A stretch of DNA of 64,000 nt from Podarcis muralis (taxonomy: Eukaryota): assembly GCF_964188315.1 (NCBI RefSeq), contig NC_135664.1:2170001-2234000 (forward strand). Reading direction: 5' to 3'. The position numbers and the translations under genes are program-made. Every line of letters starts with the position of its first letter. The stretch's first letter is position 1. Positions 19,108-46,816 of the stretch are shown here, piece after piece. The notes below the pieces were generated by a model, which was given only the letters and a program-made list of their open reading frames with translations, was not told where the DNA came from and ran no database searches.

Positions 19108-20234
19108 GGGGGGCCACTAGGGGGCGCATCGGAAGATGGCTGACAATAACATCTCTCCGACCCACACGAGGTAATTTGGAGGCTATGATGGGGGTAATTA
19201 GCCTCCCTAACCCCCCCCCCCAGGATGGTGGTGGGGCGGCCCTTGCCTGCTGTGCCTTATACCACCCCTGAATTTGTGGGGATGGGGGCACTAGGCACAA
19301 AGCCCTCCTGTGGGATTTTGGCACTCCTGGACGCCGTCCCTGATTCGCGCCACTAGCTGCAAGAACTTCAAAAGAAACAATTTGGATGAGGCGAATTGCA
19401 CATATCTCAAGGAAGAAGGGGGAGTAAAGACTGCTGACAGAAGAGATCTCTGATAAAACAAGACAAGAATAATCATGAGAAGATACGCCAAGACACGGTA
19501 CGGCAAATGACTGATGGGGGAGGGAAAAAAAACTTTCCTTTCTTTTCTTATGTGATTAAACAAGAATCCCCTCCCCTTATGAGTCAGAAATGTTGTTTTA
19601 AGGACTTAAGCTGTGGATTTAAGGCTGTGTGGAGATAAACTTTCGAACCAAAGCATGTTTTAAGAAGAGCGTGGAATGTATAAGAGCTTTGGAATGACGC
19701 AGTTAAAAATGCCATCGCCATATTGGGAAGCTCTGTCGGAGGTCTTGAGTCTGGGAGGAGAAAGAGAGAAACAAAGCTGTTTATATATTGTGGATTAAAC
19801 TCCTCAGTGGGACTTAAGAGCGACAGTTTTGCAAGATTATGATGGAAAGAGCGATGTTATCTATGAAGGAGATGATATATGGAAACCATCTTGATTTGAG
19901 GATTGGAAGAACGGAAAATTCACACAGGGTTATTATTACTATTGGTGTTTATTGGCTTAAGGAGACTATCAGAAGAGATCATAAAGAAAAAAGAGAAAAT
20001 ATATGAACAAGATGTGATGTGGAAACAGCAAGATAAGATGGGATAGAATTATGAACTCTGTCTGGACTGATTTGGACTGATTTGGACATTAACGCAGCAG
20101 CAAGAAGAAGATCAGAATTCCCCTTCGGATCTTGAAATATGGGTCCCCCCCAACAAAATTCAAAATTTGGCTTTGTAATTCGGAATTTATGTGATGTGAT
20201 TAAATTTGATGTGATTGGCCAGTTAATAAAAATT
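19108..20234 (+). mobile_element. 1.13-kb non-autonomous L1-like retroposon with 20-bp TSD
   Basis: ATTTGAAGTGATGAAAGTTT at 19088-19107 and 20235-20254. 5' end GGGGGG...GAAGATGGC, 3' AATAAAAA. An empty paralogous site is present at 42023-42042. Confidence 0.88.
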
Positions 20235-21209
20235 ATTTGAAGTGATGAAAGTTTAAGTACGATGCAATCTTGACTAATTAATATAAATGCTTCATCAGTG
20301 GCTGTTCTGTCAATTATTTTCACTTCCCATCTGATCTTGGTTTTGCTCTATAAATGGGGACCTGAATGGGAGGAACCTGAGTTGGAGGAGGAGGCCTCTT
20401 GCTTTTCCTTCCTGACTGAGCATAAGATGCCTCCTCTTAAAAGGTTTGGCAGGCAGGGAATCCAACTATCTGGCTTCGTCTCATTGCTTTCCTCCAATGC
20501 TAAACTTGTTGCTTGCTCACTCGTAATCTGGTGATCCACTCAACATCAGTGCACAACATGTCACATCCAGGCCAGTGTAATAAAACCCATTGGACTCCAG
20601 TCAAGGCTTGGCTAAGGTCAGTTGCTACTTTTTGGAACAGAGAGCAGAGCTTACACAATACAGAAATTAAACCAACAGACTACGGAAGATGTCTTAAATG
20701 AATTTCTCAGTTTATTGATATACAAAGCTTAGGAGAACAAAATGATGTGAAGTGTACTTATGAATGATACAGCATACATGTAGAAAATGGAGAAAATTCA
20801 ATAAATAGAAATGACATAACTAGAAACTATTGTTGAATATCAGAATTGATATGGTTAATAGGTAGTTAGGACAAAGGAATCACACTCAAAGACCTAACTC
20901 CTCTCTCCCTCCAGCCTATCTGGTTGTGAGATAAATATAACTTCTCAAAGCAAAAAATGATTAAATGATAAAACTTTACAAACTAAGGGCAGTAGACCAG
21001 GACTCATTGTAGTCCTTGGCAAAGCAAGGTAGCAAAACATTTCCTCCCATCTTACGGTTCATGTCAACAGGACTACACAAAACCTGGGCTAAGAAGGAAC
21101 ACAATCTCTTTCACAGATGAAGAATGAGCAACATGGATGAGCAAGTGTCTTTCCTTTATGCACTTCTGGGCATCGGGAACATGGACTATTTTAAGAATCA
21201 GATGTCCCC

Positions 21210-22922
21210 TTAATTTCTGGTTGTCAGGTGCTCCTTTGTGTTCAGATCAGGCCTCAGCACAATCATGTAGCACTTGGGAAGGAAGATGCAGCCCAGAAGC
21301 CCAGCACTGGAGGCCAACATAGAGAAGATCTGCACGGCCACCATGTACTTGCCCTTGGTGCTCAGGTAGGTGGGCACAAAAGACACCCAAACACTGCAGA
21401 AGACCAGCATGCTGAAGGTGATCAGCTTGGCTTCGTTGAAGGAGCCGGGCAGCTTCCTGGCTAGGAAAGCCACCGTGAAGCAGGTGGCAGCCAAGAAGCC
21501 CATGTAGCCGAGGGCAACGTAAAACATGGTCACAGACCCTTCGTTGCATTGCAGGATGATCTCTTCCACCTGGGAGAGCATGTCGGGCTCTGGGAATGGG
21601 GGAGAAGAGCCCAGCCAGATGGTGCAGATGAGAACTTGCCCCCCAGAACAGGAGATGACAATGGAGTTGGCCAGACTCTTGCCCAGCCATCTCCTCACCC
21701 TGTTCCCGGGCTTTGTGGCCAGGAAGGCCAGCACCACCGTGATGGTCTTTGCCAAGACAGAAGAAACAGCAACTGAGAAGATGATGCTGAAGGCCGTTTG
21801 TCGGAGAAGGCAGGTCTCTTTCCTTGGGCGCCCGATGAAGAGGAAGGAGGACAAAAAGGAAAGCAGGAGGGAGACGAGCAGGATGTAGGAGAGGTCTCGG
21901 TTGTTGGCTTTGACTATGGGAGTGTCCTTGTATTTAATGAAGATTCCCAACACAATGCCTGCAGTTATAGATAAGAAGAGGGTAACGGAAGCTAAAAACA
22001 TTCCTAAATATTCTCCATAAGTCAGGAAGGTAATAATCTTGGGGACACATTGATCTCTGTCCTTGTTTGGATACTGATCTTCTGAGCATTTGGTGCAATG
22101 TTCTGCATCTGAGGAAGTGGAAAAAGAGTGGCTGCAGCATCAGTTACATCCCTAATGATCTGTGCTCTTTTACGTTTTGAAAAACTCTGTGGTGGACTTC
22201 AGTAAACAAGAATGTTAAAATAGGTAAAGCAAAATTGTGATGTAGGATAAACTGAGTAGCAATGAGCACTCCGCTTCTGTTAACTGCATTTTTTTGGATC
22301 CTGCCTAATCCTGAAGAAACAGCTCTTTAACTTGACATTTGAAATGCAGTTTTCTGTTGCTTCCATGCAATGTTCCTAGTAGTGAGATCAAAACAGTCCA
22401 TTGATTATATTGTAATAATTTTCATATGAAGTATTGTTCATTTTTTATTGTGCTTTTGCTATTAAAAATTTGCTGGTTTGCATCACCTGTCCATTACTCT
22501 TTATAAATGTCAACATGATTTCCTTTTTGGTGTGACTTGGTATAAAAAATAAAGAAAGAATGCTTTATGGGCATTCCTCTCACAGCTGCCCACTTTCAAC
22601 CCCAGAGATTTCTTCCTTATGACCACTCCTTTCAACTCCCTTCCTGGATGTAATAAAGTTGATTAATCCTATGGATGTCGAGGAAGAATCCACATTCCCC
22701 AATGTCTGCAGAAATCTCACAAAAAGTGGGTGAGACTGGATTACTGCCCTGTGTTTACTCTCTCCAGAAATACCTTTCTCCTTGGAGTCACCCACCTTCC
22801 TGGGCGGAGAAGGTCCCTTCCGCACACCGAGCACAAGCATAGCAGCAAACGGGCTTTTCTTCTAGAACCACCTTGGCATATCCAGGTCGACATCTCTCTG
22901 TACACCTGGAACGAGGTACGGC
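21210..22922 (-). pseudogene. Vmn2r: V2R fragment, exons 5-6 only (22796-22922, 21210-22108), reading frame open
   Basis: Exon 5 [19 protein letters not shown]...QE, then the full 7TM exon. The upstream part is cut by the palindrome centre. Confidence 0.92.
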
Positions 22923-23185
22923 CTAACCAGAAAGACAAGAAGGTGCAACAAAGAGGAACAGTTAGGAGTATTTGTGGGTATGTCATTCACTCATAGGGTG
23001 AATTGAAACAGATATATGGTCTGCAGCCTTTGACGCCCTCATCAGGGTCCCTTCAACCCCCACTGACCATTGGGGTGACCAGAATATCTTGTTCTTCATA
23101 ATTCGTTCAGGACAACTGAGGTTTGCGCCACAGGCCTCTGATTCCTCTTCTCCGTTTACCTGCTTCCCTGCTTAATAAATCTTCA

Positions 23186-23435
23186 TTTTTTTTATTATAA
23201 TAAATTTTTATTGATTTTCCAAACACATAATAAAAACAAACAATACACAAAACAAAAACATACAAACATATAAACATGTATAATTTCATAATCTTATTTT
23301 CATACACCTTACTTCCCGGACTTCCCCATACCTCCCCTTTTCTGCATCCTTGTTTTACATTTCTTCAGCAACTCCTCCAATTAATTAATTATTTAAATCA
23401 CTTTCATTAGATTCTTTTTTCTTTAACTTACTTAT
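23186..23435 (-). mobile_element. L1-type 3' tail at the palindrome junction, no TSD
   Basis: A T-run starts exactly at 23186. The sequence is homologous to 14436-14771 and to ~61320-61499. Confidence 0.85.
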
Positions 23436-23659
23436 GGACTACATAGATAAGAAGAAAAGGGAAAGCCCCTAGTAAAAGGGAACTATTGGGTTTTCATACA
23501 TGCAGAAGGATGGAAAGCGATTTATTTTTGAAATGATAATTACTGATTTATTGTGGATTTTTTAAATTTGTGGAGTAAGCTCACTTGTAGATGTTGCAAT
23601 AGTTAAACTATTGTATGTGCAGGAATAGAGAAGTGCACAGTTGTTGGTGAAAGATGATA

Positions 23660-24886
23660 CCGTATTTTTCGCTCTATAACACGCACCAGACCATAACACG
23701 CACATAGTTTTTAGAGGAGGAAAACAAGGAAAAAATATTCTAAACGAAACAGTGGATGTATGATTTTTATGGTTCATGCTGTGGCCACAGACATGTGATC
23801 TGACAGTGAGTTTGGGGTAGCCCAATGCAAAAATCCTGAGGATCCATGTGGATCCATGCTTTGTAACCACGTTTTTGCGCCATTGCGCCCCCATGAAACA
23901 GTGGGTGCGTGTGTGTTTTTTGGTGCAGGCTATAGCCATGGAAATGCTATGTGATCTGATGGTGAATTTGGGGTGACCCAGTGCAAAAATCCTGAGGATC
24001 CATGTGGATCCGTGCTTTGTAACCACGTTTTAAGTGGGGAGGGAAGGAAAAGAACTCAAGGGACAAGGAGCACGTGTGGGGGGTGTAGAGAAGGAGCTTT
24101 CCTGCGAGCTGAGCGGGGAGGAGGGAGGGAAAGAGCACTGTTGCTTTAAAGGTATACTTAAGGTATTTGCCCTGTGCCTGGGTTTTTTCCATTTAACAGT
24201 TTGCAGCCTTTTCCGTCCGCTCCTTGTTTTGAGGCAGAATAGATTTGAGCAAGTGAGGAGGGCTTGGATTGCAGGGGATTCGCCATTAGCTGTGTAAAAG
24301 CGCTCCTCCTTGCAGCCTGAATGATAAGCAGCCACCAGCAGCAATAGAATGGAGCACAAAAAAGAGATAGGGGCACTAGGACCCAGACAATGCTCAAATC
24401 TATCCTGCCTGAAAACAAGCTGCTCCGTCCCAGCTGAGACGCGGGGATTTGCGAAGTTTTCCCCTCTCCCTCATCCCTCCCCAGCCTTTTTTTTTACTTC
24501 CTGGTTTTCACTGCGCTGGCTCAGAGCTCGAGGTTGGTTTTATTTTGCTGCTGGTTACTTAAATTTTATCTTTCCTGCCCTCCCTCTGCAGCCTCATTGC
24601 TCTGTTTAGAGAGCGCACAGACTTTTGCTAGCGTCTGTCCCTCCTCCCTTGTAAGCGGCTGCTGCCGGCTTTGCTGCCATGGCTCTCCTTCCCTCCCTCC
24701 TCCCCGGCTCCAGGTCGCTTTAAAGCAAGCAAAGTCAGAGCCTCGTAGAGCCTGTAAGTGGCTCCCGCTTTGCTTGACTGACGGCAGCCATGGCTCCGAT
24801 CCGTGCATTCGCTCCATAACACGCACAGGCATTTTCCCTTACTTTCTAGGAGCAAAAAAGTGCGTGTTTTGGAGCGAAAATTACGG
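23660..24886. mobile_element. Non-autonomous Tc2/pogo-like DNA transposon, 1227 bp
   Basis: TIRs CCGTATTTTTCGCTCTATAACACGCAC / GTGCGTGTTTTGGAGCGAAAATTACGG with TA on both sides. Internal ~65-bp direct repeat. Absent from the paralogous intron near 39280. Confidence 0.9.
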
Positions 24887-25253
24887 TAATTAAAAAAAAC
24901 CTATCGTAATATAAGATTAACATTAAGAAATGGCATGTAAACTAGAAATAACTAGGGAAATCACATTTCAGATTCCATTGCCATTTTCTTTGAAGATTTA
25001 TTAAGCAGGGAAGCAGGTAAACGGAGAAGAGGAATCAGAGTCCTGTGGCACAAACCTCAGTTGTCCTGAACGAATTATGAAGAACAAGATATTCTGGTCA
25101 CCCCAATGGTCAGTGGGGGTTGAAGGGACCCTGATGAGGGCGTCAAAGGCTGCAGACCATATATCTGTTTCAATTCACCCTATGAGTGAATGACATACCC
25201 ACAAATACTCCTAACTGTTCCTCTTTGTTGCACCTTCTTGTCTTTCTGGTTAG

Positions 25254-26965
25254 GCCGTACCTCGTTCCAGGTGTACAGAGAGATGTCGACCTGGATATGC
25301 CAAGGTGGTTCTAGAAGAAAAGCCCGTTTGCTGCTATGCTTGTGCTCGGTGTGCGGAAGGGACCTTCTCCGCCCAGGAAGGTGGGTGACTCCAAGGAGAA
25401 AGGTATTTCTGGAGAGAGTAAACACAGGGCAGTAATCCAGTCTCACCCACTTTTTGTGAGATTTCTGCAGACATTGGGGAATGTGGATTCTTCCTCGACA
25501 TCCATAGGATTAATCAACTTTATTACATCCAGGAAGGGAGTTGAAAGGAGTGGTCATAAGGAAGAAATCTCTGGGGTTGAAAGTGGGCAGCTGTGAGAGG
25601 AATGCCCATAAAGCATTCTTTCTTTATTTTTTATACCAAGTCACACCAAAAAGGAAATCATGTTGACATTTATAAAGAGTAATGGACAGGTGATGCAAAC
25701 CAGCAAATTTTTAATAGCAAAAGCACAATAAAAAATGAACAATACTTCATATGAAAATTATTACAATATAATCAATGGACTGTTTTGATCTCACTACTAG
25801 GAACATTGCATGGAAGCAACAGAAAACTGCATTTCAAATGTCAAGTTAAAGAGCTGTTTCTTCAGGATTAGGCAGGATCCAAAAAAATGCAGTTAACAGA
25901 AGCGGAGTGCTCATTGCTACTCAGTTTATCCTACATCACAATTTTGCTTTACCTATTTTAACATTCTTATTTCCTGAGGTCCACCGCAGAGTTTTTCAAA
26001 ACGTAAAAGAGCACAGATCATCAGGGATGTAAGTGATGTTGCAGCCACTCTTTTTCTCTTCCCCAGATGCAGAACATTGCACCAAATGCTCAGAAGATCA
26101 CCATTCAAACAAGGACAGAGATCAATGTGTCCCCAAGATTATTACCTTCCTGACTTATGAAGAATATTTGGGAATGGTTTTAGCTTCCGTTACCCTCTTC
26201 TTATCTATAACTGCAGGCACTGTGTTGGGAATCTTCATTAAATACAAGGAAACTCCCATAGTCAAAGCCAACAACCGGGACCTTTCCTACATCCTCCTCG
26301 TCTCCCTCCTGCTTTCCTTTTTGTCCTCCTTCCTCTTCATCGGGCGCCCAAGGAAAGAGACCTGCCTTCTCCGACAAACGGCCTTCAGCATCATCTTCTC
26401 AGTTGCTGTTTCTTCTGTCTTGGCAAAGACCATCACGGTGGTGCTGGCCTTCCTGGCCACAAAGCCCGGGAACAGGGTGAGGAGATGGCTGGGCAAGAGT
26501 CTGGCCAACTCCATTGTCATCTCCTGTTCTGGGGGGCAAGTTCTCATCTGCACCATCTGGCTGGGCTCTTCTCCCCCATTCCCAGAGCCCGACATGCGCT
26601 CCCAGGTGGAAGAGATCATCCTGCAATGCAACGAAGGGTCTGTGGCCATGTTTTACGTTGCCCTCGGCTACCTGGGCTTCTTGGCTGCCACCTGCTTCAC
26701 GGTGGCTTTCCTAGCCAGGAAGTTGCCCGGCTCCTTCAACGAAGCCAAGCTGATCACCTTCAGCATGCTGGTCTTCTGCAGTGTTTGGGTGTCTTTTGTG
26801 CCCACCTACCTGAGCACCAAGGGCAAGTACATGGTGGCCGTGCAGATCTTCTCTATGTTGGCCTCCAGTGCTGGGCTTCTGGGCTGCATCTTCCTTCCCA
26901 AGTGCTACATGATTGTGCTGAGGCCTGATCTGAACACAAAGGAGCACCTGACAACCAGAAATTAA
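25254..26965 (+). pseudogene. Vmn2r: V2R fragment, exons 5-6 (25254-25380, 26067-26965), reading frame open
   Basis: 127-nt exon TTAG|GCC...GAAG|GT and 899-nt 7TM exon. The gene begins mid-intron 4 at 23436. Confidence 0.92.
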
Positions 26966-27940
26966 GGGGACATATGATTCTTAAAATAGTCCATGTTCCC
27001 GATGCCCAGAAGTGCATAAAGGAAAGACACTTGCTCATCCATGTTGCTCATTCTTCATCTGTGAAAGAGATTGTGTTCATTCTTAGCCCAGGTTTTGTGT
27101 AGTCCTGTTGACATGAACCGTAAGATGGGAGGAAATGTTTTGCTACCTTGCTTTGCCAAGGACTACAATGAGTCCTGGTCTACTGCCCTTAGTTTGTAAA
27201 GTTTTATCATTTAATCATTTTTTGCTTTGAGAAGTTATATTTATCTCACAACAAGATAGGCTGGAGGGAGAGAGGAGTTAGGTCTTTGAGTGTGATTCCT
27301 TTGTCCTAACTACCTATTAACCATATCAATTCTGATATTCAACAATAGTTTCTAGTTATGTCATTTCTATTTATTGAATTTTCTCCATTTTCTACATGTA
27401 TGCTGTATCATTCATAAGTACACTTCACGTCATTTTGTTCTCCTAAGCTTTGTATATCAATAAACTGAGAAATTCATTTAAGACATCTTCCGTAGTCTGT
27501 TGGTTTAATTTCTGTATTGTGTAAGCTCTGCTCTCTGTTCCAAAAAGTAGCAACTGACCTTAGCCAAGCCTTGACTGGAGTCCAATGGGTTTTATTACAC
27601 TGGCCTGGATGTGACATGTTGTGCACTGATGTTGAGTGGATCACCAGATTACGAGTGAGCCAGCAAGAAGTTTAGCATTGGAGGAAAGCAATGAGACGAT
27701 GCCAGATAGTTGGATTCCCTGCCTGCCAAACCTTTTAAGAGGAGGCATCTTATGCTCAGTCAGGAAGGAAAAGCAAGAGGCCTCCTCCTCCAACTCAGGT
27801 TCCTCCCATTCAGGTCCCCATTTATAGAGCAAAACCAAGATCAGATGGGAAGTGAAAATAATTGACAGAACAGCCACTGATGAAGCATTTATATTAATTA
27901 GTCAAGATTGCATCGTACTTAAACTTTCATCACTTCAAAT

Positions 27941-29070
27941 AATTTTTATTAACTGGCCAATCACATCAAATTTAATCACATCACATAAATTCCGAATTAC
28001 AAAGCCAAATTTTGAATTTTGTTGGGGGGGACCCATATTTCAAGATCCGAAGGGGAATTCTGATCTTCTTCTTGCTGCTGCGTTAATGTCCAAATCAGTC
28101 CAAATCAGTCCAGACAGAGTTCATAATTCTATCCCATCTTATCTTGCTGTTTCCACATCACATCTTGTTCATATATTTTCTCTTTTTTCTTTATGATCTC
28201 TTCTGATAGTCTCCTTAAGCCAATAAACACCAATAGTAATAATAACCCTGTGTGAATTTTCCGTTCTTCCAATCCTCAAATCAAGATGGTTTCCATATAT
28301 CATCTCCTTCATAGATAACATCGCTCTTTCCATCATAATCTTGCAAAACTGTCGCTCTTAAGTCCCACTGAGGAGTTTAATCCACAATATATAAACAGCT
28401 TTGTTTCTCTCTTTCTCCTCCCAGACTCAAGACCTCCGACAGAGCTTCCCAATATGGCGATGGCATTTTTAACTGCGTCATTCCAAAGCTCTTATACATT
28501 CCACGCTCTTCTTAAAACATGCTTTGGTTCGAAAGTTTATCTCCACACAGCCTTAAATCCACAGCTTAAGTCCTTAAAACAACATTTCTGACTCATAAGG
28601 GGAGGGGATTCTTGTTTAATCACATAAGAAAAGAAAGGAAAGTTTTTTTTCCCTCCCCCATCAGTCATTTGCCGTACCGTGTCTTGGCGTATCTTCTCAT
28701 GATTATTCTTGTCTTGTTTTATCAGAGATCTCTTCTGTCAGCAGTCTTTACTCCCCCTTCTTCCTTGAGATATGTGCAATTCGCCTCATCCAAATTGTTT
28801 CTTTTGAAGTTCTTGCAGCTAGTGGCGCGAATCAGGGACGGCGTCCAGGAGTGCCAAAATCCCACAGGAGGGCTTTGTGCCTAGTGCCCCCATCCCCACA
28901 AATTCAGGGGTGGTATAAGGCACAGCAGGCAAGGGCCGCCCCACCACCATCCTGGGGGGGGGGGGGGTTAGGGAGGCTAATTACCCCCATCATAGCCTCC
29001 AAATTACCTCGTGTGGGTCGGAGAGATGTTATTGTCAGCCATCTTCCGATGCGCCCCCTAGTGGCCCCCC
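27941..29070 (-). mobile_element. Mirror copy of the 1.13-kb retroposon
   Basis: TSD AAACTTTCATCACTTCAAAT at 27921-27940 and 29071-29090. Confidence 0.88.
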
Positions 29071-30578
29071 AAACTTTCATCACTTCAAATTGGTGGAAAC
29101 TTTCATTGTTATTATGATTCAACTTGTAGCATTCCAATGAAGGGTGCTATATAAATTTAAGCTGGGAGGAGCCTCTGGCTTAACTCATTTTATTATTCTT
29201 ACTAATATTAATAAGTAATAAAATATGAATTTGGGGGAGGGGAATACATTACATTAGTGTCCAGTCATTGCATTTCTATAGGATTTTTCATTTCAATCAA
29301 TCAAATCTTTATTACAGTAGTAGACCAGCATCAGTAGAGTGGGGTACAATCATTTTCAGTCTGTAAAACGTTTTGGAAAGCAAAAAAAAGTATTTAACAC
29401 AAAGTATATATAAAAGTCTAAAAGAAGGGTTTAGGAGCATTAAACGGATGTGGAAGAGCATAAAAGGTTAGTATATAAAGACTATGGCCACCAATTTACA
29501 GAGCACTCTGATATGAGTGTTCATTAAATCTAGCATAATAATAGTAATGAAAAGGTGTTGCAATGGAGGAGTGCAGGGAAAAGAAAACTCCTTGCACTCA
29601 TTCTTTCTTGCTAAAGAATTAAAAGATTTCTCTGCTTTTCTCCTTCTTTTTCCCTTGGGTGGTGTGTTCAGCGGTCACCCTCAGGGGAAACAGGTCCCCC
29701 CCCCCTTGGAGGAAATGGACTGATCGGAACCTGGCTGTGACATCGGCTCAGAATCCCAGCCTCACTTTACAGTTGAGGCCAACAGCCTTTTGGTGGTTTC
29801 TCTGCAAGTGAATCAGAAAAAACTCTTATTGGACACCGAAAAAGCAAAGTCTGAAGACTGATGTCTGGAGAAATGGTGAGGGGACCAGCAGGAAACTGCT
29901 AAGGGAGTTTTGAGTCCTTTTATTCTGTTGCAGTTGCAGAGAAAGGAGGGTGGGGGGTGGGGGGGTGGGGTCCGCCCCAGGTGTCATCACTGAGGGGGGT
30001 GGGAAAAGGACATAAAGCCGAGTTTAAAATAAAAATAAAAATTGGGCTCACCAAACCTTTTAGTTGAGTCAAAAAACGCGGCTGGCACTGGGCGCCGCAT
30101 CGCGGGGGCTGGCACTTACCGGGGGGGGGTGTGTGTGCAGAGTGCCTGATCCACGCATCTCTCCTGGGGGTGACTTGGTGGCTTGGGCCCCTGCAGGCTG
30201 GGTGCTGCCTGAAACAGAAGCGTGGGGCTTGCGTCTGCCCCCTGCCTCTCCCTCAGCCGCCCTACAGCTGGGGGGGAGGCAGAGGATAGGCTCCAGAAAG
30301 CCCACAGGACCCCCGCGTTGAACCGGGCACCCAAGCAGCTGGCTATACCCCTGTTCTGTTGTTTGAATTATGGGTGCCTTGAGAGTGAATGTGCTGTGCT
30401 TGCTGCCCCACTCGTCCTGATGGACCAGCCCCCCATGGCGCCAGGGCTGTAGGGCTTCCCTGGCTAGCGACTCAATGTGGGCAAGAGAGTTTCCCTTCTG
30501 GGTTCCTCTCTCATTTTGGGATGCTCTCTTTCTCCTCTCTCCCCACCGTCAACTCTGGGGTCCTGTCTCTGCTAGCAG

Positions 30579-32715
30579 TCAGCCACCGAGGAGGACATTC
30601 TCAATGTCAAGGAGGACGAAGGAAAAGGCGAGGAGGAGACCGCAAAACGGCTGGATCTCCTCAGCCCTGACTGGGTAGGTGGCCGTGGCCTAAGTGGTGA
30701 TTGGCAGAAGGGGAGGGAAGCATATCAACCGCAGAATGGAACTGTTGTTTCAGTTATGGGTGCCTTGAGTTTTAACGTTTGGTTGCGTTTTTTAATTGCT
30801 CGTTTTTTGCATCTTTTCCTTGCAGGTTCCAAGTATGTCACCATTTTCTAGTGTTTCCTCCCTGTCCTCCCTGGATTCCCTTTGGGACTCCCTCAATGAG
30901 GTACGTAGCAGACAGAGCAGGAGGGAAGCCCTGCTGAGCTGGAGAACCCTGAGGCTGGGGAGGAGGAGGAGGAGGAGGAAGCCGGCTGGCCGGTTAGGCC
31001 ACCTTCTGGACTGGTCGTGAGCAAGGGGGCACGCAGGCAGGGGGCTGCTGGGGGCAGATGGGCTTGCTGCCCCACTTGTCCTGATGGACCAGCCCCCCAT
31101 GGCGCCAGGGCTGTAGGGCTTCCCTGGCTAGCGACTCAATGTGGGTTCCTGTCTCATTCTGGGCTCCTCTCTTTCTCCCCTCTCCCCACCACCAATGCCA
31201 CCACCTCTGGGGTCCTGTCTCTGCTGGCAGGCAGCCTCTGAAGTGGCTATCGAGGAGGAAGAGCCACAGGAAGTACCAGAGAGCCCCCCAGAGGAGGACG
31301 GGGAGGCCCTTTATTTGCCGTGCACCCCACCTGGAGAACACCTGGAGGCAAGCGTAATCGAGGTCAGACGAAACATACATTCATTCATGTCATATGAAAA
31401 GCTTCCCTGAACAGGGCTGTCTTCACATGTCTTCTAAAAGTCAGATAGTTGTTTATTTCTTTGACATCTGGCGGGAGGGCGTTCCACTGGGCGGGTGCCA
31501 CTACCGAGAAGGCCCTCTGCCTGGTTCCCTGTAACTTCACTTATCGCAGTGGGGAACCGCCAGAAGGCCCTCAGCACTGGATCTCAGAACGATGGGGGTG
31601 GAGATAATTCTCCTGGGTTGCTTTTGGTTTGGTGTTTGTTTTGTAAGATATCTCTTTTGAATGCGTTTCCAGGTGGCTCCTGCCAAATGAAGTTATTAAT
31701 TGCAAAGTGGGTTTGGCGATAATAAAACCATGTTGGCACTTTGCAAAGCCGGTTCTCTCTGGGGTTTTCCTGCCTCCTATACCTTCCCCCCACCCTCTTG
31801 TTCTTGGTTTTGTGTCTCGTTGAGATCTCTCCAAGGCTGACCACATGAGAACTTGGGAGAGGAGTGTTCCCTCCTGACTACAACCCTTTCATATAACGCC
31901 TTGCCCCCAAAAAGAAAAGGAGGGATTATGACAGCCTGCCACCACACAGGCCCTTCTCCTTCACAAACGGTCTGGAGGCAGCAACACAAGAAGGGGCCTT
32001 TTCTGTGGTGGCTCCCCACTTGCGGAATGCTCTTCCCAGGGAGGCTCATCTGGCATCTTCATTATGTATCTTTAGGTGCCAAGCAAAGACGTTTCTCTAG
32101 AACAGAGCTTTCCAAACTGTGTGCTCCTCCCAGGGCTGGAAAAGGGCTAGTTGAACTGAATCCCTGTGTTGCGAAATGAGGCATGTCTCCAAAGTGTGTC
32201 ACCAACATGGAAAGTTCTGCTCTAGAACCAGCCTTGGGCTAATTGGCCAACGCATGGCATTTTCAACATGCTTGTGGATTGGGAGGCTGGCTTATGAGTT
32301 CGTTTTTGTTTTTAATACATATGTTGTGTTTTTATTTTGTATTTTTATGCTGTAAGCCGCCCTGACAGCTTCAGATGAAGGACGGCGTACGGATTTAATC
32401 AATCAATTGTTTGTTTGTTTGATTGATTGATTAATGATTGCGGCATTTTCCCAGAATCTGGAGGTGAATTGTTTACTTTTCTCACAGGACTGTGAGGAAG
32501 AGAGGCCTCCGAAGACCCCCACTTGCCTGGGTTCCATCATCTCCCGGATTCGCAAGATCTTCAGAAGAGCGCTGCCGCCAGCACCACCAGTGCCACCAGA
32601 GCAACCCAATACAAGAGGCAGCAGTGGGGTGCAGGGGGAAAGGAGGCCACTCTGCACGTGGCTCAGGCGCTGGATGCGGCAGCATCGCAGCTGTGTCCAC
32701 CCTGAACCAAGATGA
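30579..32715 (+). CDS. Putative novel spliced gene (exons 30579-30674, 30826-30900, 31231-31362, 32488-32715); 141 aa from ATG 30835
   Basis: Exons of 96, 75, 132 and 228 nt, each preceded by a pyrimidine tract and AG; the first three end in GT and the last ends in the stop codon. All junctions phase 0. AATAAA at 32932. Confidence 0.62.
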
Positions 32716-35405
32716 GGAGGAGTTGGGAGGCTTGCACCGATCCGCCCAGGGGATTTTGCCACCCCCCCCTGGGATGACACTCGGGGCGATACCCCCCCCC
32801 CACACCCCACCTTCCTCCGCCAGTGGTGGCAGGGGAAGTAGCACCTGGAGGCGCCCGAGTCCCTAAGGGACATTTCCTTTCTGTTGTCCTTGCACAGGTC
32901 TTAATCCTTGTGGTCCAAACTGGAGAGGAGGAATAAAAGATCTGAGCGCGGAGGCAAGCGGGGCGAGAAACCCAACCCCATGTGGCCCTACGCTGGCGTC
33001 CCACACGGCCAGCCCCAGTCCTAGAGCCCGACACCTTTTGAGATTGCGGAGCAGAACGGAGAAGACAGCGGGCAAAGGGTGGACGGCGAAGGAGAAGTGC
33101 GAGAGAACGACAGCGTCTACGGTGGCGGAGGAGAAGGAGAAGGCAGGACTGAGAGGGGAACGATCCTGGAAGGTGGCTTGAAAAGAAAGGGCAATATGGC
33201 GTAGGAAAACTGCTAGCTCACGCTGCCCATGCCCAAAGGAGGAGGAGGAAAGAAAGGAGGAAAGCAAGCGAGCAAGAAGGGACAGCTAAAGAAAGAACTG
33301 AGAAAAGAGACAGTGAGACCTTCTGGGGGTCAAAGAAATTACAATAAGAAGGAAACTGAGAGTTTTTAGGTTGCGCTCCGCGGCAACCTGGAAGTAACAA
33401 AACGAAATTTAAAGTTTACCTTAAGAATTGTTGTAAAATTGATGAGTGCTAAAATGTCAAGGTTAAGAAAATATAGAATTACAGCTGTAAATTGATTAAG
33501 TAATGGAAGAAAGGGGGGGGGAGAAAATGAGTAATCAGTCAATTGAAGCGAGGGGTTGCTGAAGAAATTTTGAAATAGGGATGCAGAAGGGGGAGGTATG
33601 GGGAAGTCGGGGAAGTAAGGTTTATGAAAAAGAGGTTGTGAAATTATACGTGTTTATATGTTTGTGTGTTTATGTATTGTTTATTGTATTGTTTTTTATT
33701 TATGTTGGAAAATTAATAAAAATTTATATATATAAAAAAAGGAAGTAACAAAACGCATTATTTCCGGGTTTTGCCATTCGCGCAAACGCTCAAAATGATG
33801 TCACGCACATGCATGGAAGCAGCGAATCGCGACCAGCACACGTGCAGACGTGGGTTGCGTTCGCTTCAGGATGCAAAGGGGGCTCCGGAACGGATCCCGT
33901 TCGCATCCAGAGGTACCACTGTATACTAATGGGAGACTTAAATGGAGTTACATCGTTAGAGATGGGAGTTATTTGCCCAATCAAGTGGGGCATGGATTTT
34001 ATGAAACAGATCAAACAAACAAACAAACAAATATTGATAAAGAATAATAAAGCTGCTAGAATGCTAGCCTGGCTTGTGCACAGACAATTTGTTTATGAGT
34101 AGAGAAGTTTCTGCTCAAAGACGGGGAGCAAGTTGGTTCCATGTGCAACAGAAGCTCACCTTCCCCAAAACATGTCAAAGGGCAAAAGGTTTAAGGCTCA
34201 GAGCAACCTTTCTCCCCTCCACCAACCCCAGAGAGCTTCCCTCTGTTGGAGAAGCCTTTCAAAGATGGGGTGGAAATTCACTTGAAGTGGCTCCGAAGCC
34301 ACCAAGGTGCTACTTCCCTTCAGGGGGAGAACCAGAAGAGAGTGGCAGGAATCAAGCAGCCCAGACCCACCCATAGCGGCCAGAGGGTGGGCTTGAGAAA
34401 ACCCTCCCCATCGCAGGTTCCACCAGTCTCTGTTTCTAGAAGCCGCCAGGAAACAAAATCCCACCGCCATGTATCCCGTTCACAGTACTGAGGATGGCAT
34501 TTCTCTGCATTCTCCATTTTTTTTATTTTTTTAAATTTACTTATTGACTCTATATAAAGCCCTATGCCTGGAGGTCTCAGGGTGGTTCAGAGAGCAAAAT
34601 CAAAATATAAAACCACAATATATATAATCAAAATAAAAACAACAACCCAATAACAGCCTCTGCCCTCCCAAAAAACCCCACATTTTAAAAGGGCTTAGGA
34701 TGCCTGGGATACAAGGCTGGGACTCCCACATCTGGCTGTTGTCCATCCCTGACTCTCCCACCTCATATGAATCATAGAATGGGAGACTTGGAAAGGGACC
34801 CCAAGGTCCTCTAGTCCAACCCTCTGCAATGCAGGAATCTCAGCTAAAGAATCCCAACAGATGGCCATCCACCCTCTGCTTCAAAACCTCCAAGGAAGGA
34901 GAGTCCATGGTCGGATCCAGCTCCTTCTTTGGTCCTTGGGAGCAAAGTTCAGGCCAAACTTCCAACTTCCAAACACACCCCTGTCCATCATGTTTTTCTC
35001 CAGCTCTGCACCTGCCACTTGAGCCATTCAAGACTTCAGAAAGTTATTGTGGTGAAACTTATTCCACTTGGAATAATCAAAATTATAGTCATCTCATCTT
35101 CTGAAAGCTCAGGAGATATTTCTGTAGATTGCATGAGCCTCGGAAAGCAACATGACAATATTAATTGCGCTGTGTCTGGGAAAGAAAAAGTTGGTGCCGA
35201 GAATATTTCCTGTGTTGGAGACAGACTGAGTCAAGATGCAGAGCTGGCAAAAGAGGGGTGTGCCTGCCTTGTGCTTCCGAGCTCCAAAGGTATAGTTGAA
35301 AACCACCCAGATTGGGAAAGCCCACCCAGTCTGGTCTTGCAAGAGTCTTTGGGTTCTTCTGCTTCGCCTCCTTGGCAAGTAAGAGGAGGAGGAGGCAGAG
35401 CCAGA

Positions 35406-35519
35406 ATGAGATCCCTGCTCCTTCTGTTGCTGCTTCTGCTGCTCATGATGCCCTTTGGAGTCTGCGGGAACCCAAGACTTGGGAGGGACCTGGAGGGATC
35501 TCACCTGAAGCATCCATGA
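35406..35519 (+). pseudogene. Possible V2R exon-1 remnant (signal peptide)
   Basis: ATG at 35406 gives [21 protein letters not shown]. It then runs into CR1-like antisense sequence and stops. Confidence 0.45.
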
Positions 35520-36003
35520 CACACGGTCACCTTCGGAGGGAGACTGTTCCACTGCTCAACAGCTCTGTGTGCATCAAAGCTCCGGTCATGGAGCAGAGAT
35601 TTCCAAATTTTTGTTCTATGCTAGACAGGTTTGATATTAGTGTGAAAGGATAAATAAATACTAATCTTTGTGGATCATATAATGTTTCCTCCCCCCCATT
35701 CATATGAATATCAGTTTCACTCTTTTTAAAGAATTCATTTATTGCAGGGAAACTAGGTCCTGCTTTCAAACATTGTCTTTCCTGTGACGTTTGGTGGAGG
35801 AAGGAGAGCAATGGGGACACGCAAGGCTACAACCGTGGCAGGTATTTCCTTCCCCTTTTTGCAACCTGCAGTCCACACAGATGCCGATCTTGACTGGGGA
35901 TAGACCTGTAAAATAACATAGTTACTATTAGTACTAGTAATAGAAGCATACAGCCCAACATTTCTCTGATGAAAATAGAGACGTCCCATTCCATAACGAT
36001 AAT

Positions 36004-38090
36004 CACTGGGCAACAATTTTTTACTTTTTGAATGTTGTCTAGATTTCTACAACTGCTTTAGGGTATTTTTGCACTGCTGAATCAGGAAATGGCATACGTT
36101 TATCTCCATCAGGTCAGGGTTTTGTGCTATGTTGATTTGAAAAAAATCAGATCTTGTGACAAAATCAATTACATTTTTGTGGCATTATCGGCTGATTTTT
36201 GTCAACACATATCATCCTAAATATGTTTTTAAGAGAATAAAAATGTTTTTCCAACAACATATATTGATTACCTGATAGAAACATCGATTACTGTAAACTG
36301 AATGGTGGGCATTGATAAAGGTAAGTACACGTAAATTGCATGTTGCTTCACCATTTTTCAAACTTCAGGGCTTGAACTTCTTGGAACTCCTGGAATGCTC
36401 AGCGGCAGGGAGGTCTCTCTTCAGAGTCCAACAGTAGTCAGCCATTATGACTGCGTCCCAGCGACCCTGATACCTGGTCTCCATCTCTTTCATGTCCTGA
36501 TGGAATCTCTCCCCCTGCTCGTCACTCATTGAACCCAGGTTCTCAGGAAACCGGTCCATATGTGAAAATAGGTAGTCCATCTTGACGCTCATGTTGCAGC
36601 CCAGGTTTCTGAAAGCAGTCAGCATGTTGTTGACAAATTCTGCGTAGTTTCTGGCCTTATTGTTGCCAAGAAAGTTATTCACTACCAGAACAAATGCCTT
36701 CCACGCTTCCAGTTCCACTTTGTTCATTGAGTTTCCGAACTCTGGATCTCTGATGAGCTGACGGATCTGAGGACTGTCAAAGATGCCAGCTTTCAACTTC
36801 TCCATGGTCAATCCTGGAAAAGCCTGGCACAAGTAAGTGAATCAGTCACCATCCTTGTCCAGAGCCTTGGTGAACTGCTTGATTAAGCCGAGCTTGATGT
36901 GCAGCGGTGGGAAGAGTATTCTGTCTCTGTCCACCAGAGGGTCGTTGAAGACGTTCCTTTCTTTGCAAGGCACTAATTCCTCCCGCACAGGCCAGTCCTT
37001 CTTCGTGTAATGCTGAGCACGGTCCCTACTATCCCACATGCACAGAAAACATCGGTACTGGTTGCCGTTCTTTAGCAGAACACATTTCAGTGATCACTTG
37101 CTGCTGTTAATGAACAGTCTCCAATCTTTGGGTTCGTACTGTGGCACTCCAAGCTTGAGCAGAAGCTGCGCAATATCTGCACAGTACACCAAGTCCTTCT
37201 CTTCCGAGAAAAAACGGAGGTACTCTTGATGCCTGTTGCAGAAGAAGCTGATGCAAGCACTGTCAGAGAGGTTTTTTTCCTTCAGTCTGGATGCCAACAG
37301 TTCGGCAGAGTCCTTTGACAAGCTGAGGTCGCGAACTAGATCATTCAACTCCTTTTGGGAAAATGGATGTGGAGCATCATCTTCAAGAACCACTTCTTCT
37401 TCATGTCCTTCAACACTGGAGGCATCTTCGTCACTAATGTCAGGAAGTTCTCCAAAGATAGGCACTGGAATTTCATCACAATGAGCTACAGGACGATGTG
37501 CTGATTGAAGATCAGGATACTTGAGGCTGCTCCAGTTCTTTCTGTTGATCCCAGTCACATCAACAGCACAGAAGTAGCAGTCAGTGACATGGTTTGTCGG
37601 CTCCCTCCAGACCATGGGAATTCCAAAGTTCAGACTCCTCTTGCCATTGGTCCACCCACGAAGAGTCTCTGTGCATGCCTTGCACACCATGTGTGGCGCC
37701 CAAGCTTTATCCTGGTCACCAAGTTTAATACCAAAATAACTTTATGCTTTGCCGCACCAATTTATGGAAGATTTCAAGGTTTTATGACTTCAAACTGATC
37801 CCTTTTCGACATAATCACCCAGAACTATTGGACCTGAATACTTCTTGTCATTAAAATAATCATTTCCAATCAAAACAATTATTTGACATGGCATTTTACC
37901 CCCACCAACTTCTTCTAAAATGCTCCACACAAGCGTACATGTGAACAAAAACGTAAAAAAATGACATGTGGCCATAGCTCAAAAACTTGACCTGATTGAA
38001 CAAAACCAATGTGATTTTTGGATTCAGTGCATCAGATTCGTTCTAAATCAACTGAAAAAACGCAGACAACAAATTTGTTGTTGACCAGTG
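36004..38090 (-). mobile_element. Chapaev3-like transposon, mirror copy
   Basis: Same TIRs and ORF pieces as 10086-12172. Confidence 0.88.
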
Positions 38091-38591
38091 TTTACTGTTG
38101 ATATCCAGAGCTTTTTAAAGGCGGAACTCATTGAAACTCAGTTTTGGCACCTCTCAGGGGGGTGCCATAGAAAAATAGCACTCTTTATACCCCACACGTC
38201 TTTTTGGGTTGCCTCAGCACTCTGGGCAGCTCCCAACATAAAGAAATTCATACTAAAATATTAAACATAATAAAAATTCCCGATATAGGATTGGACGCCT
38301 TGTGGGTCGGATAACTCCACATCTGCCAACATTTCTCCAATGAAAATAGGGACATTCTAAGCAAAGTTGGGAAATTCCAGGATCAAATGAAAAACTGTCT
38401 CTAATTCAGGGACATCCCGGGAAAATTGGGGCACTTGCAGGGTCTTTAGTAATAAAAATGGCTGAATAGGAATTCCAGTCTACATGAGATACACGCAGCC
38501 CCAAATCATAAGAGGTTGAAGTGAGTAGGACTGAGATATCCATCTTGGCTTCCCGTTTTCTTAATGCTGGTGTTTTCCCCTGCCATTCCAG

Positions 38592-41077
38592 CTTCACCCT
38601 TTCTTAAGAGAAATCCAGTGCCTGAATACTTCCAGAGGCAGACTGTGCTTGGATGAGAACTGGGAGCTACCAGCGGACTTTGATATTGTGAACTGGGTGA
38701 TGTTTCCCAATATCTCTTATGACATTGTGAAAATTGGGAATATAAGGAGAGAGACGTCTGCTGGAATAAAGTTCACCATTAACCCAGAAGCCATTGAGTG
38801 GCCCAAGAAATTCAATAAGGTAGGGTAAATCACAAAGGGAGAAGGCTAGGAGATGATTATTATGTTTTTCCTTAAACAACCGCTGAAAAATGACCATATC
38901 AGGATATCAGGTTGACCAATGGTGTCTTGACCGTCAATAACAGCTGCAACCACCACTCTTTCTTTTCACAGCAGCTGAGATAGGAGGTAAATTTGGGGTG
39001 CTCAAAGAAAGGATAGAGCACAGAGGTCCTCAGAGAAGACACCAGAATCTTCGACAGAAAGGACTACGTAGATAAGAAGAAAAGGGAAAGCCCCTAGTAA
39101 AAGTGAACTATTGGGTTTTCATACATGCAGAAGGATGGAAAGTAATTTATTTTAGAAATGATAATTACTGATTTATTGTGGATATTTTAAATTTATGGAG
39201 TAAGCTCACTTGTAGATGTTGCAAATGTTAAACTATTGTATGTGCAGAAATTGAGAAGTGCACGGCTGTTGGTGAAGGATGAGAAGTTAAAAAAAAAACC
39301 CTATTGTAATATAAGGTTAATGTTAAGGAATGGCATATGAACTAGAAATAACTAGGACATTCATCAGCAATAAGAGGAAACCTTGCATGCCTCAAAAACA
39401 GAGTGAGGGAAACCAATATTTGGAAAAGTTATATTAAATTTGTCTTAATTAGTGATTGAGAGATTATCCGAATCCTGAACTTTGGGGAAATCACATTTTA
39501 GACTCTATTGCCATTTTCTTTGAAGATTTATTAAGCAGGGAAGCAGGTAAACGGAGAAGAGGAATCAGAGGCCTGTGGCGCAAACCTCAGTTGTCCTGAA
39601 CGAATTATGAAGAACAAGATATTCTGGTCACCCCAATGGTCAGTGGGGGGTTGAAAGGACCCTGATGAGGGGTCAAAGGCTGCAGCCCAAAGATCCGTTT
39701 GAATTCACTCTATGAGGGAGTAACATACAAACAAATACTCCTAACTGTTCCCCTTTCTTGCACCTTCTTGTCTTTCAGGTTAGGCCGTGCCTCGTTCCAG
39801 GTGTAATGAAAAATGTCGACCTGGATATGCCAAGGTGGTTCTAGAAGGAAAGCCCATTTGCTGCTATGCTTGTGCTCGGTGTGCGGAAGGGACCTTCTCC
39901 GCCCAGGAAGGTGGGTGACGCCAAGGGGGAAGGTATTTCTGGAGAGAGTAAACACAGGGCAGTAATCCAGTCTCGCCCACTTTTTGTGAGATTTCTGCAG
40001 ACATTGGGGAATGTGGCTCCTTCCTCAACGTCTTTACAATCACCTTCATTACATCCTGGAAGAGAGTTGAAAGGAATGACCATAAGGAAGAAATCTCTAG
40101 GATTTCTTCAAAATGTAATCGAGTTCAGATCATCAGGGATGTAAGTGATGTTGCAGCCACTCTTTTTCTCTTCCCCAGATGCAGAACATTGCACCAAATG
40201 CTCAGAAGATCACCATTCAAACAAGGACAGAGATCAATGTGTCCCCAAGATTACCACCTTCCTGGCTTATGAAGAAAATTTGGGAATGGTTTTAGCTTCC
40301 GTTGCCCTCTTCTTATCTATAACAGCAGGCACTGTGTTGGGAATCTTCATTAAATACAAGGAAACTCCCATAGTCAAAGCCAACAACCGGGACCTTTCCT
40401 ACATCCTCCTCGTCTCCCTCCTGCTTTCCTTTTTGTCCTCCTTCCTCTTCATCGGGCGCCCAAGGAAAGAGACCTGCCTTCTCCGACAAACGGCCTTCAG
40501 CATCATCTTCTCAGCTGCTGTTTCTTCTGTCTTGGCAAAGACCATCACGGTGGTGCTGGCCTTCCTGGCCACAAAGCCCGGGAACAGGGTGAGGAGATGG
40601 CTGGGCAAGAGTCTGGCCAACTCCATTGTCATCTCCTGTTCTGGGGGGCAAGTTCTCATCTGCACCATCTGGCTGGGCTCTTCTCCCCCATTCCCAGAGC
40701 CCGACATGCGCTCCCAGGTGGAAGAGATCATCCTGCAATGCAACGAAGGGTCTGTGGCCATGTTTTACGTTGCCCTCGGCTCCCTGGGCTTCTTGGCTGC
40801 CACCTGCTTCACGGTGGCTTTCCTAGCCAGGAAGTTGCCCGGCTCCTTCAACGAAGCCAAGCTGATCACCTTCAGCATGCTGGTCTTCTGCAGTGTTTGG
40901 GTCTCTTTTGTGCCCACCTCCCTGAGCACCAAGGGCAAGTACATGGTGGCCGTGCAGATCTTCTCTATGTTGGCCTCCAGTGCTGGGCTTCTGGGCTGCA
41001 TCTTCCTTCCCAAGTGCTACATGATTGTGCTGAGGCCTGATCTGAACACAAAGGAGCACCTGACAACCAGAAATTAA
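38592..41077 (+). CDS. Vmn2r: V2R exons 4-6 (38592-38819, 39784-39910, 40179-41077), frame open but 5' exons missing
   Basis: 228-nt exon LHPFLREIQ...[12 protein letters not shown]...WPKKFNK, 127-nt CRD exon, 899-nt 7TM exon. Splice phases 0/0/1 are consistent. Confidence 0.93.
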
Positions 41078-45548: not shown

Positions 45549-45549
45549 C

Positions 45550-46586: not shown

Positions 46587-46628
<42 letters not shown>

Positions 46629-46813: not shown

Positions 46814-46816
<3 letters not shown>

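What the first reader, a model, noticed from the sequence alone, without database searches (positions are those of the whole stretch)
30579..32715. Hidden multi-exon gene: acidic Ser-rich modules plus a basic amphipathic C-terminus
Seen, and invisible in the ORF track: four exons with canonical boundaries join in phase 0. SATEEDILNVKEDEGKGEEETAKRLDLLSPDW | VPSMSPFSSVSSLSSLDSLWDSLNE | AASEVAIEEEEPQEVPESPPEEDGEALYLPCTPPGEHLEASVIE | DCEEERPPKTPTCLGSIISRIRKIFRRALPPAPP...LCTWLRRWMRQHRSCVHPEPR*. That is 141 aa from ATG 30835, longer if an upstream start exon exists. AATAAA at 32932; CpG region upstream. I recognise no family. Inference: a lineage-specific, largely disordered protein with two Arg/Trp-rich amphipathic helices and a VxPx-like motif near the C-terminus, amplified in a palindrome as germline genes often are.
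Basis: partly seen in the sequence, partly recalled or inferred. Interest (0 to 1): 0.85.

Follow-up and report, generated by a model that had tools for sequence, protein, structure and literature searches.

The report
Annotated fast-evolving lizard gene, amplified copies
The exons are a real, spliced and transcribed wall-lizard gene, but it is already in RefSeq as an uncharacterised protein; it is a shortened, exon-duplicated copy of an old reptile-only gene of unknown function.

Summary
All four exons translate as stated, and RNA contigs or reads show every predicted GT..AG junction: 30674>30826, 30900>31231 and 31362>32488.

The gene is not hidden. It lies about 2.2 Mb into a 78-Mb chromosome, among V2R receptor fragments.

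It does have a family. Promoter, exon 1, the acidic exons and the basic last exon are DNA-level homologous to LOC114588499-type genes. That family is uncharacterised, has no Pfam domain, and was found in squamates and turtles. The window gene lacks the parent's central conserved blocks and has duplicated phase-0 exons.

P. raffonei has a frame-preserving 184-aa counterpart. Against it, module B shows only synonymous changes (p=0.003), module A has omega near 2, and exons diverge twice as fast as introns.

AlphaFold gives three isolated helices and no fold. The window holds three copies: two in 16.3-kb palindrome arms and one with an extra A-B module. The germline role, the CpG island and the poly(A) site are not supported or not tested. 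Function is unknown.

The parts
29861..29875 (+). Coding part of exon 1 (MSGEM), donor gtgagg. The exon extends upstream to at least 29670.
   Evidence: Joint 29875>30579 in X1 and contig 29670-29874. In-frame TGA at 29852. Homologous to parent exon 1, MAGKL|gtgagg. RefSeq paralog models start MSGEM.
30579..30674 (+). Exon A: 32 codons, acidic, phase 0-0, with a tagcag (NAGNAG) acceptor. Derived from parent exon 3.
30826..30900 (+). Exon B: 25 codons, Ser-rich, with a LWDSL motif. Derived from parent exon 2. It holds the ATG (30835) that RefSeq uses.
   Evidence: It is 25/25 aa identical in P. raffonei with 4 synonymous changes.
31231..31362 (+). Exon C: 44 codons, very acidic (net -14). A second derivative of parent exon 3.
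31437..31633 (.). SINE-like repeat inside intron 3, not part of the mRNA. Homology to copy 3 and to locus L005 ends here.
   Evidence: Word depth 3,900-46,000 in RNA contigs. Homology breaks at 31447.
32488..32715 (+). Last coding exon: 75 codons plus stop. It carries the basic two-helix module (SIISRIRKIFRRAL and RPLCTWLRRWMRQH) and a VHPE motif.
32716..33194 (+). 3' UTR, at least this long. It contains AATAAA at 32932, which transcripts read through, and an acceptor at 32897|32898 that paralogs use for a long isoform.
   Evidence: Contigs 32486-33194 and 33018-33198. The alternative frame is open to 33182. Paralog proteins P0049 and P0055.
15462..18316 (-). Mirror copy of the whole gene in the left palindrome arm. 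Exons lie at 18302-18316, 17503-17598, 17277-17351, 16815-16946 and 15462-15689.
   Evidence: All exons are 100% identical. The arms differ at 4 positions in 5 kb.
42839..45548 (+). Third copy, RefSeq LOC144329085. Layout: exon 1 (42839-42853), A (43555-43650), B (43802-43876), A' (44238-44333), B' (44485-44559), C (44894-45025), then a terminal FPEMDIG exon (45411-45548). There is no basic last exon.
   Evidence: P0051 matches this exon chain. The region is collinear at 93% with microchromosome locus L005.
6843..41333 (.). Palindrome: arms 6843-23185 and 24991-41333, with a spacer of about 1.8 kb. Each arm carries V2R 7TM-exon fragments and one gene copy.
   Evidence: 7tm_3/NCD3G genes are called next to the gene.

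Best explanation
This is LOC144329118 of Podarcis muralis, a transcribed and correctly spliced five-exon gene. Its most likely product is 181 aa; RefSeq lists 141 aa from an internal ATG.

Shown: it arose by DNA-level partial duplication of an old reptile gene (LOC114588499 type, beside ARMC6 on the smallest chromosome). It kept the promoter, the 15-nt exon 1, exon 2 (now module B), exon 3 (duplicated as modules A and C) and the last exon. It lacks the parent's central conserved blocks. All module exons are phase 0-0, so copy number can change without breaking the frame: copy 3 and other paralogs carry extra A-B units of 683 bp. The unit of a V2R fragment plus the gene is also present on the microchromosome (93% identical there). 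Here it is amplified as a tandem repeat and a 16.3-kb palindrome near one chromosome end.

Inferred mechanism, low confidence: the protein has a long acidic, Ser-rich disordered region (net -28) and a conserved basic C-terminal module (net +11) of two amphipathic helices. That module most likely docks onto the same partner or surface as in the parent protein. The strictly conserved module B (Ser cluster plus WDSL) is a second, probably phospho-regulated, short linear binding motif. Modules A and C are fast-evolving spacers. A truncated copy that keeps only the docking ends could compete with or redirect the parent protein.
For: Splicing and strand come (three studies of organism A, one of organism B, and raw stranded reads). 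Identity with RefSeq XP_077791798.1, and the organism and locus, come.

Homology of the last exon to P0003 (E 2.4e-8) and P0004 (E 5.5e-4) is. The family spans squamates and turtles, with conserved blocks. DNA homology of the promoter, exon 1, introns and exons to the parent locus L004 is.

The frame-preserving P. raffonei counterpart is P0054 (184 aa), at the collinear locus L006. Selection pattern: module B has 0 nonsynonymous against 4 synonymous changes (p=0.003); the last exon has omega 0.56 with 1 change in helix 1 and 2 in helix 2; exon indels total 21 nt, a multiple of three, by protein-guided alignment; exons diverge 9.1% against introns 4.7% (p=2e-4). The C-terminal-domain tree puts the window gene and the P. 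raffonei gene on a long stem, apart from the slow parent clade.

Charge split and amphipathicity are.
Against: There is no protein-level evidence. Overall omega is 0.69, and modules A and C are at or above 1, which fits relaxed constraint as well as positive selection. Against closer paralogs, exon and intron divergence do not differ.

Expression looks modest: a few reads in 1.9 Gb of X22. The laid contigs differ from this copy at several sites (a 9-nt in-frame deletion at 32584 and UTR differences), so part or all of the RNA signal may come from near-identical paralogs elsewhere.

The exon 1 junction rests on one contig plus homology. The mechanism has no direct test. No characterised homolog exists (Pfam, PDB, Atlas and papers all empty).
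Confidence: 0.72

Rival explanations
1. The copies in this window are young, functionally redundant or decaying duplicates. They are transcribed because they carry the parent-type promoter. Only the microchromosome members of the family matter biologically.
For: The arms are 99.9-100% identical, and copy 3 differs from copy 1 by 0.8% in exons against 1.65% outside them, which is not a significant difference. The same holds against L005 (4.5% vs 6.7%, p=0.2). Copy 3 lacks the basic exon, and the site of its last donor reads GG. The RNA contigs carry variants not present in this copy.
Against: No frameshift or stop occurs in any exon of the three copies. RefSeq builds intact models on both loci. 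This copy lacks the alternative GT donor inside the last exon but keeps the short, two-helix ORF, as in P. raffonei isoform X3.
Confidence: 0.2
2. It is a non-coding or circular RNA locus. The ORF would be incidental in GC-rich DNA that is open in several frames, and the back-joint 30900>30579 would be a back-splice.
For: A 'goes back 322' joint appears in X1, X2 and 3 reads of X22. Several overlapping ORFs on both strands cover the last exon.
Against: The back-joint is exactly the forward B>A' junction of copy 3 and of L005-type paralogs with repeated A-B units. The annotated frame is the one conserved out to turtles. Module B shows only synonymous change.
Confidence: 0.04
3. The palindrome, and so the count of two identical copies, is an assembly fold-back artefact. 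Only one arm plus copy 3 would exist.
For: Near-perfect arm identity over 16 kb with a short spacer.
Against: The arms are not identical. There are two substitutions and two homopolymer indels within 5 kb, and the inner arm blocks are 99%. RefSeq lists two protein accessions and the look-up reports a second similar place.
Confidence: 0.12

Closest known systems
RefSeq LOC144329118 (XP_077791798.1 / XP_077791799.1), Podarcis muralis, 'uncharacterized protein'
   Same: It is the same locus.
   Different: The RefSeq product starts in exon B. RNA joint 29875>30579 and homology to the parent and to paralog models (MSGEM...) support a 181-aa ORF with 40 more N-terminal residues.
LOC128405524 isoform X3 of Podarcis raffonei (P0054, 184 aa)
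   Same: Same exon chain A-B-C-last at a collinear locus (88.7%). Module B is identical. Helix 1 differs at 1 residue and helix 2 at 2. The protein ends VHPEPR(S).
   Different: It lies on the 13.3-Mb microchromosome, not on a 78-Mb chromosome. It has a GT donor inside the last exon that gives longer isoforms X1 and X2; the window copy has AAT there. Module A differs at 10 of 32 residues, and module C has 7 extra residues.
Parent family: LOC114588499 (P. muralis), LOC128405676 (P. raffonei) and orthologs in snakes, skinks, iguanians, Rhineura and turtles. All are uncharacterised, with no Pfam domain.
   Same: Homologous promoter, 15-nt exon 1, exons 2 and 3, introns and last exon. Shared C-terminal motif: TPSxLS..S(W/R)xRKIFRK, a Pro-rich linker, RPL..LRxW, then (I/V)HP at the end.
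   Different: The window gene lacks the central blocks (LWPPPGDNTEE, YFPCYRTYxEFPRYQPP, DAxVQC, RKSPQKRKHR). It has a 27-codon in-frame deletion in the last exon, a Trp-to-Arg change in helix 1, and duplicated exon-3 modules. Its C-terminal domain sits on a long branch.
Primate VCX/VCY 'variable charge' genes (an analogy recalled from memory, not tested)
   Same: Small proteins with one basic and one acidic half, acidic repeat number varying between paralogs, and ampliconic or palindromic genomic setting.
   Different: No sequence similarity was found in any search. Here the variable units are whole phase-0 exons, not in-exon 30-bp repeats. The chromosome is probably an autosome, and the tissue of expression is unknown.

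Membership tests
Reptile LOC114588499-type family (uncharacterised) | C-terminal basic two-helix domain ending in (I/V)HP | tested here: met
   phmmer hits P0003 (E 2.4e-8) and P0004 (E 5.5e-4). Alignments A3 and A4 give nearly invariant S78, L80, S85, F91 and P138.
Reptile LOC114588499-type family (uncharacterised) | Shared 5' end: promoter region and 15-nt exon 1 with a gtgagg donor | tested here: met
   Window 29546-29777 and 29843-29930 match L004 9661-9890 and 9983-10086 (84% and 71%). MSGEM| aligns with MAGKL|.
Reptile LOC114588499-type family (uncharacterised) | Central conserved blocks (LWPPPGDNTEE; YFPCYRTYxEFPRYQPP; RKSPQKRKHR) | tested here: not met
   These blocks are absent from the 181-aa ORF, and tblastn with the spliced protein found no further coding blocks in the window. 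The gene is therefore a truncated derivative, not a full member.
Reptile LOC114588499-type family (uncharacterised) | Presence outside squamates and turtles (birds, crocodilians, mammals) | tested here: inconclusive
   Sequence and profile searches returned only squamates and turtles. The searches are word-seeded and length-limited, so absence is not shown.
Ampliconic 'variable charge' genes (VCX/VCY-like) | Sequence homology to VCX/VCY | tested here: not met
   No hits outside reptiles. No Pfam family.
Ampliconic 'variable charge' genes (VCX/VCY-like) | Bipartite charge and acidic-module copy number varying between paralogs | tested here: met
   Net charge -28 and +11. Layouts are A-B-C in copy 1, A-B-A'-B'-C in copy 3, and three A and three B units in L005.
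Ampliconic 'variable charge' genes (VCX/VCY-like) | Testis-restricted expression | not testable with these tools
   Run and sample names are coded, and the single read-laying run is used.
LIR-type (Atg8/LC3-binding) short linear motif | [W/F/Y]xx[L/I/V] core preceded by acidic or Ser residues, and binding to Atg8-family proteins | tested here: inconclusive
   The pattern SLDSLWDSL is present and unchanged in P. raffonei. The pattern is common and binding cannot be tested here.
VxPx ciliary-targeting signal | VxPx near the C-terminus that directs ciliary transport | tested here: inconclusive
   VHPE lies at residues 176-179, and (I/V)HP is nearly invariant across the family. There are no localisation data.

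The most novel reading that the evidence does not exclude
The A-B-C / two-helix genes are a lacertid-specific, rapidly diversifying 'variable-charge' family under positive selection. Exons evolve twice as fast as introns and module A has omega near 2. Copy number of whole phase-0 exons and of whole genes is being amplified, together with V2R fragments, in a palindrome near one chromosome end. The conserved C-terminal two-helix/(I/V)HP module would be a previously undescribed reptile-specific targeting or docking domain.
Probability: 0.2. Interest if true: 0.6.

Novelty: already known. Interest (0 to 1): 0.33.

Why it matters
The gene is already in RefSeq, so its existence is not a discovery. 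What this check adds is as follows.
- A likely longer ORF of 181 aa.
- The origin of the gene: an exon-by-exon derivation from an unstudied gene family found in squamates and turtles.
- A clean example of phase-0 exon modules changing copy number between paralogs.
- A mixed selection pattern: one invariant short motif and a conserved C-terminal module, flanked by acidic spacers that change faster than the introns.

If the family proves functional, the C-terminal module would be an uncharacterised domain conserved across squamates and turtles. The amplified copies would give a non-mammalian, probably autosomal case of ampliconic gene evolution beside vomeronasal receptor genes.

Tried and rejected
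- Pfam on the four exons and on four family members gave nothing. One sub-threshold NrdR zinc-ribbon hit in a turtle protein was ignored.
- The ESM Atlas, by features, gave only low-score unrelated or generic disordered clusters.
- A PDB sequence search with the family profile gave nothing.
- A literature search for six LOC identifiers returned 0 papers. A search for P. muralis testis RNA-seq found nothing that could be mapped to the coded runs.
- No fold search was run, because the model has pTM 0.26 and no tertiary fold.
- The alternative upstream exon of paralog isoform X1 (MAGESTSIKK...) was sought in the window. It was found only at 9590-9643 (+) and 38533-38586 (-). Both are on the strand opposite the nearest gene copy and are not upstream of it, so they are not part of this gene.
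- The circRNA reading of the back-joint was rejected in favour of paralogs with repeated A-B units.
- A CpG island upstream was rejected.
- dN/dS of the last exon against distant relatives gave dS near 1 (saturated), so only the P. raffonei comparison is relied on.
- Exact look-ups of P0004 and P0050 found no contig on record.
- Word searches of earlier scan notes added nothing.

Full report
**Observation**

I laid RNA data on 27300-33200. The data were contigs from two studies of organism A (X1, X2), contigs from a second species (X6), and raw stranded reads (X22).

Every predicted junction appeared as a GT..AG joint:
- 30674>30826 in X1 and X2, plus one X22 read
- 30900>31231 in X1, X2, X6 and X22
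- 31362>32488 in X1 and X2

In X22 the first mates over the exons lie on the minus strand, as expected for an RNA of the plus strand.

One more joint, 29875>30579 (X1), reveals an upstream exon. Its last 15 nt read ATG TCT GGA GAA ATG, followed by gtgagg. An in-frame TGA lies three codons before the ATG at 29861. The spliced ORF is therefore 5+32+25+44+75 = 181 aa.

**Not hidden**

A full HMMER scan with the last exon found a 141-aa protein that is 100% identical (P0001). This is RefSeq XP_077791798.1/XP_077791799.1, "uncharacterized protein LOC144329118 [Podarcis muralis]".

The locus lies at about 2.19-2.21 Mb of OZ076963.1, a 78.07-Mb record of assembly GCA_964188315.1. It is flanked by genes with 7tm_3 and NCD3G domains, that is, V2R fragments. 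By accession order this is probably autosome 8, but that is my inference.

RefSeq models of the paralog LOC114588357 start MSGEM(Q)SAIEED. This independently supports exon 1. It also shows a tagcag tandem acceptor at exon A.

**Family and origin**

The last exon is homologous to two C-termini. One is P. muralis LOC114588499 (356 aa, on the 14-Mb chromosome). The other is a Zootoca protein.

LOC114588499 has relatives in Lacerta, Rhineura, snakes, a skink, Hemicordylus, iguanians and several turtles. All are unnamed and lack any Pfam domain. No solved structure and no paper was found.

The family shares several conserved blocks. Its C-terminal module is TPSxLS..SWxRKIFRK, then a Pro-rich linker, then RPL..LRxW, then (I/V)HP.

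At the DNA level, the window gene matches the P. raffonei parent locus L004, which lies next to ARMC6:
- The promoter region matches at 84%.
- Exon 1 matches: MAGKL|gtgagg against MSGEM|gtgagg.
- Intron segments match at 79-83%.
- Exon B sits where parent exon 2 (FPETDIGDSED...IKE) lies.
- Exons A and C both sit behind copies of the intron that precedes parent exon 3 (SAPEGQ...LLDFRW). They are duplicates of that exon.
- The last exon aligns with the parent's last exon, apart from a 27-codon in-frame deletion.

All module exons are multiples of three and phase 0-0. The parent's central blocks are absent. The gene is therefore a truncated, exon-duplicated DNA-level paralog, not a de novo gene and not a retrocopy.

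**Copies**

The window holds three copies.
- Copies 1 and 2 are mirror images in palindrome arms 6843-23185 and 24991-41333. Across the gene they differ at four positions in 5 kb.
- Copy 3 (42839-45548) has an extra 683-bp A-B unit and no basic exon. It ends in an exon-2-like exon, FPEMDIG..., whose donor position reads GG.

Copy 3 is RefSeq LOC144329085 (P0051). Its whole segment, 39043-49959, is collinear at about 93% with a microchromosome locus. That locus carries a V2R fragment, LOC144326097 and NDUFA7.

The 'goes back' joint 30900>30579 in the RNA data is the normal B>A' junction of such multi-unit paralogs, laid on copy 1. It is not evidence of a circular RNA.

**Constraint**

P. raffonei LOC128405524 isoform X3 (P0054, 184 aa) has the same exon chain as the window gene. 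Its locus is collinear with 29159-33300.

| Region | Nonsynonymous | Synonymous | Omega |
|---|---|---|---|
| Module A | 11.5 | 1.5 | about 2.1 |
| Module B | 0 | 4 | 0 |
| Module C | 11 | 3 | about 1.05 |
| Last exon | 9 | 5 | 0.56 |
| All exons | 31.5 | 13.5 | 0.69 |

- Exons differ by 9.1% and introns by 4.7% (Fisher p=2e-4).
- For module B, the contrast of 0 of 56 nonsynonymous sites against 4 of 19 synonymous sites gives p=0.003.
- Module C carries in-frame indels. Helix 1 has one change and helix 2 has two.
- Against closer paralogs, exon and intron divergence do not differ.
- In a tree of the C-terminal domain, the window gene and its P. raffonei counterpart sit on a long stem. They join a Lacerta agilis copy (support 95/87, with a long-branch caveat). 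The slowly evolving parent orthologs form a separate clade.

**Protein**

Residues 1-112 (exons 1, A, B, C and the first six residues of the last exon) have net charge -28. The rest of the last exon has +11.

AlphaFold2 with the family alignment gives mean pLDDT 61.5 and pTM 0.26. It shows only three isolated helices, at P0001 residues 11-27, 79-94 and 120-133. The two basic helices have a hydrophobic moment of up to 0.82, reached by 3 of 1000 shuffles. The LIR-like WDSL and the VHPE motif are present, but their function cannot be tested here.

**Claims that fail or stay open**

- There is no CpG island upstream (o/e 0.17-0.61).
- Transcripts run through the AATAAA at 32932, to at least 33194.
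- Paralogs splice from a GT inside the last exon (CCCA|GTACAA) to the acceptor at 32897|32898, giving a longer isoform. The window copy has AAT at that site. No such joint was seen, although the alternative frame is still open to 33182.
- Tissue specificity could not be tested, so the germline idea remains open.
- The RNA contigs carry variants absent from this copy, for example a 9-nt in-frame deletion at 32584. Part of the expression signal therefore comes from paralogs elsewhere in the genome.

**Verdict**

This is a real, already annotated, uncharacterised gene. Its interest lies in its origin, its modular exon amplification and its mixed selection pattern, not in its existence. The proposed mechanism is docking through the conserved basic two-helix module, with a conserved Ser/Trp linear motif in a fast-evolving acidic scaffold. 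That mechanism is inference only.

Noticed in passing
window 31437-31633: A SINE-like repeat in intron 3 has enormous RNA word depth, about 19,000-46,000 in organism A and 3,900 in organism B. It marks the point where homology between copy 1 and copy 3/L005 ends.
   Followed up: partly
window 46766-48644 and 1-4000; L005 14127-14421: The 80-90-bp GC-rich minisatellites are expansions of a roughly 295-bp stretch that is present only a few times at the collinear microchromosome locus. The two window arrays are inverted relative to each other.
   Followed up: partly
window 39043-49959 vs L005 650-16002: A segment of at least 11 kb (V2R 7TM fragment, gene copy 3, inserted repeat, minisatellite) is collinear at about 93% with a locus next to NDUFA7 on the 14-Mb chromosome. 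This shows an inter-chromosomal segmental duplication before the local amplification.
   Followed up: partly
window 32608-32610 and 32897-32898: Paralogs and P. raffonei have AGT here, with a donor A|GTACAA used for a 240-aa isoform. This copy has AAT, so that donor is missing, yet the downstream alternative frame stays open for 94 codons.
   Followed up: partly
window 32709-32896: Organism B contigs skip 186 nt just before the stop codon. P. raffonei has AG|GTGAGG at this site, and RefSeq isoform X3 ends ...EPRS. This copy reads AGATGAGG, with no GT.
   Followed up: partly
window 30573-30578: There is a tandem tagcag acceptor at exon A. The RNA joints seen here use the downstream AG, while several RefSeq paralog models use the upstream one, which adds one Gln.
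   Followed up: no
L003 5558-5749 and 13585-13776 (Zootoca vivipara): Two copies of the homologous last exon lie 8 kb apart in Zootoca. One has an in-frame stop upstream in its exon, so the family is also duplicated locally in that genus.
   Followed up: no
L006 (P. raffonei CM049767.1, 3.65 Mb): The P. raffonei counterpart lies inside the span of a same-strand V2R gene model (NCD3G, 7tm_3). The association of this gene with V2R exons therefore predates the copies in the window.
   Followed up: no
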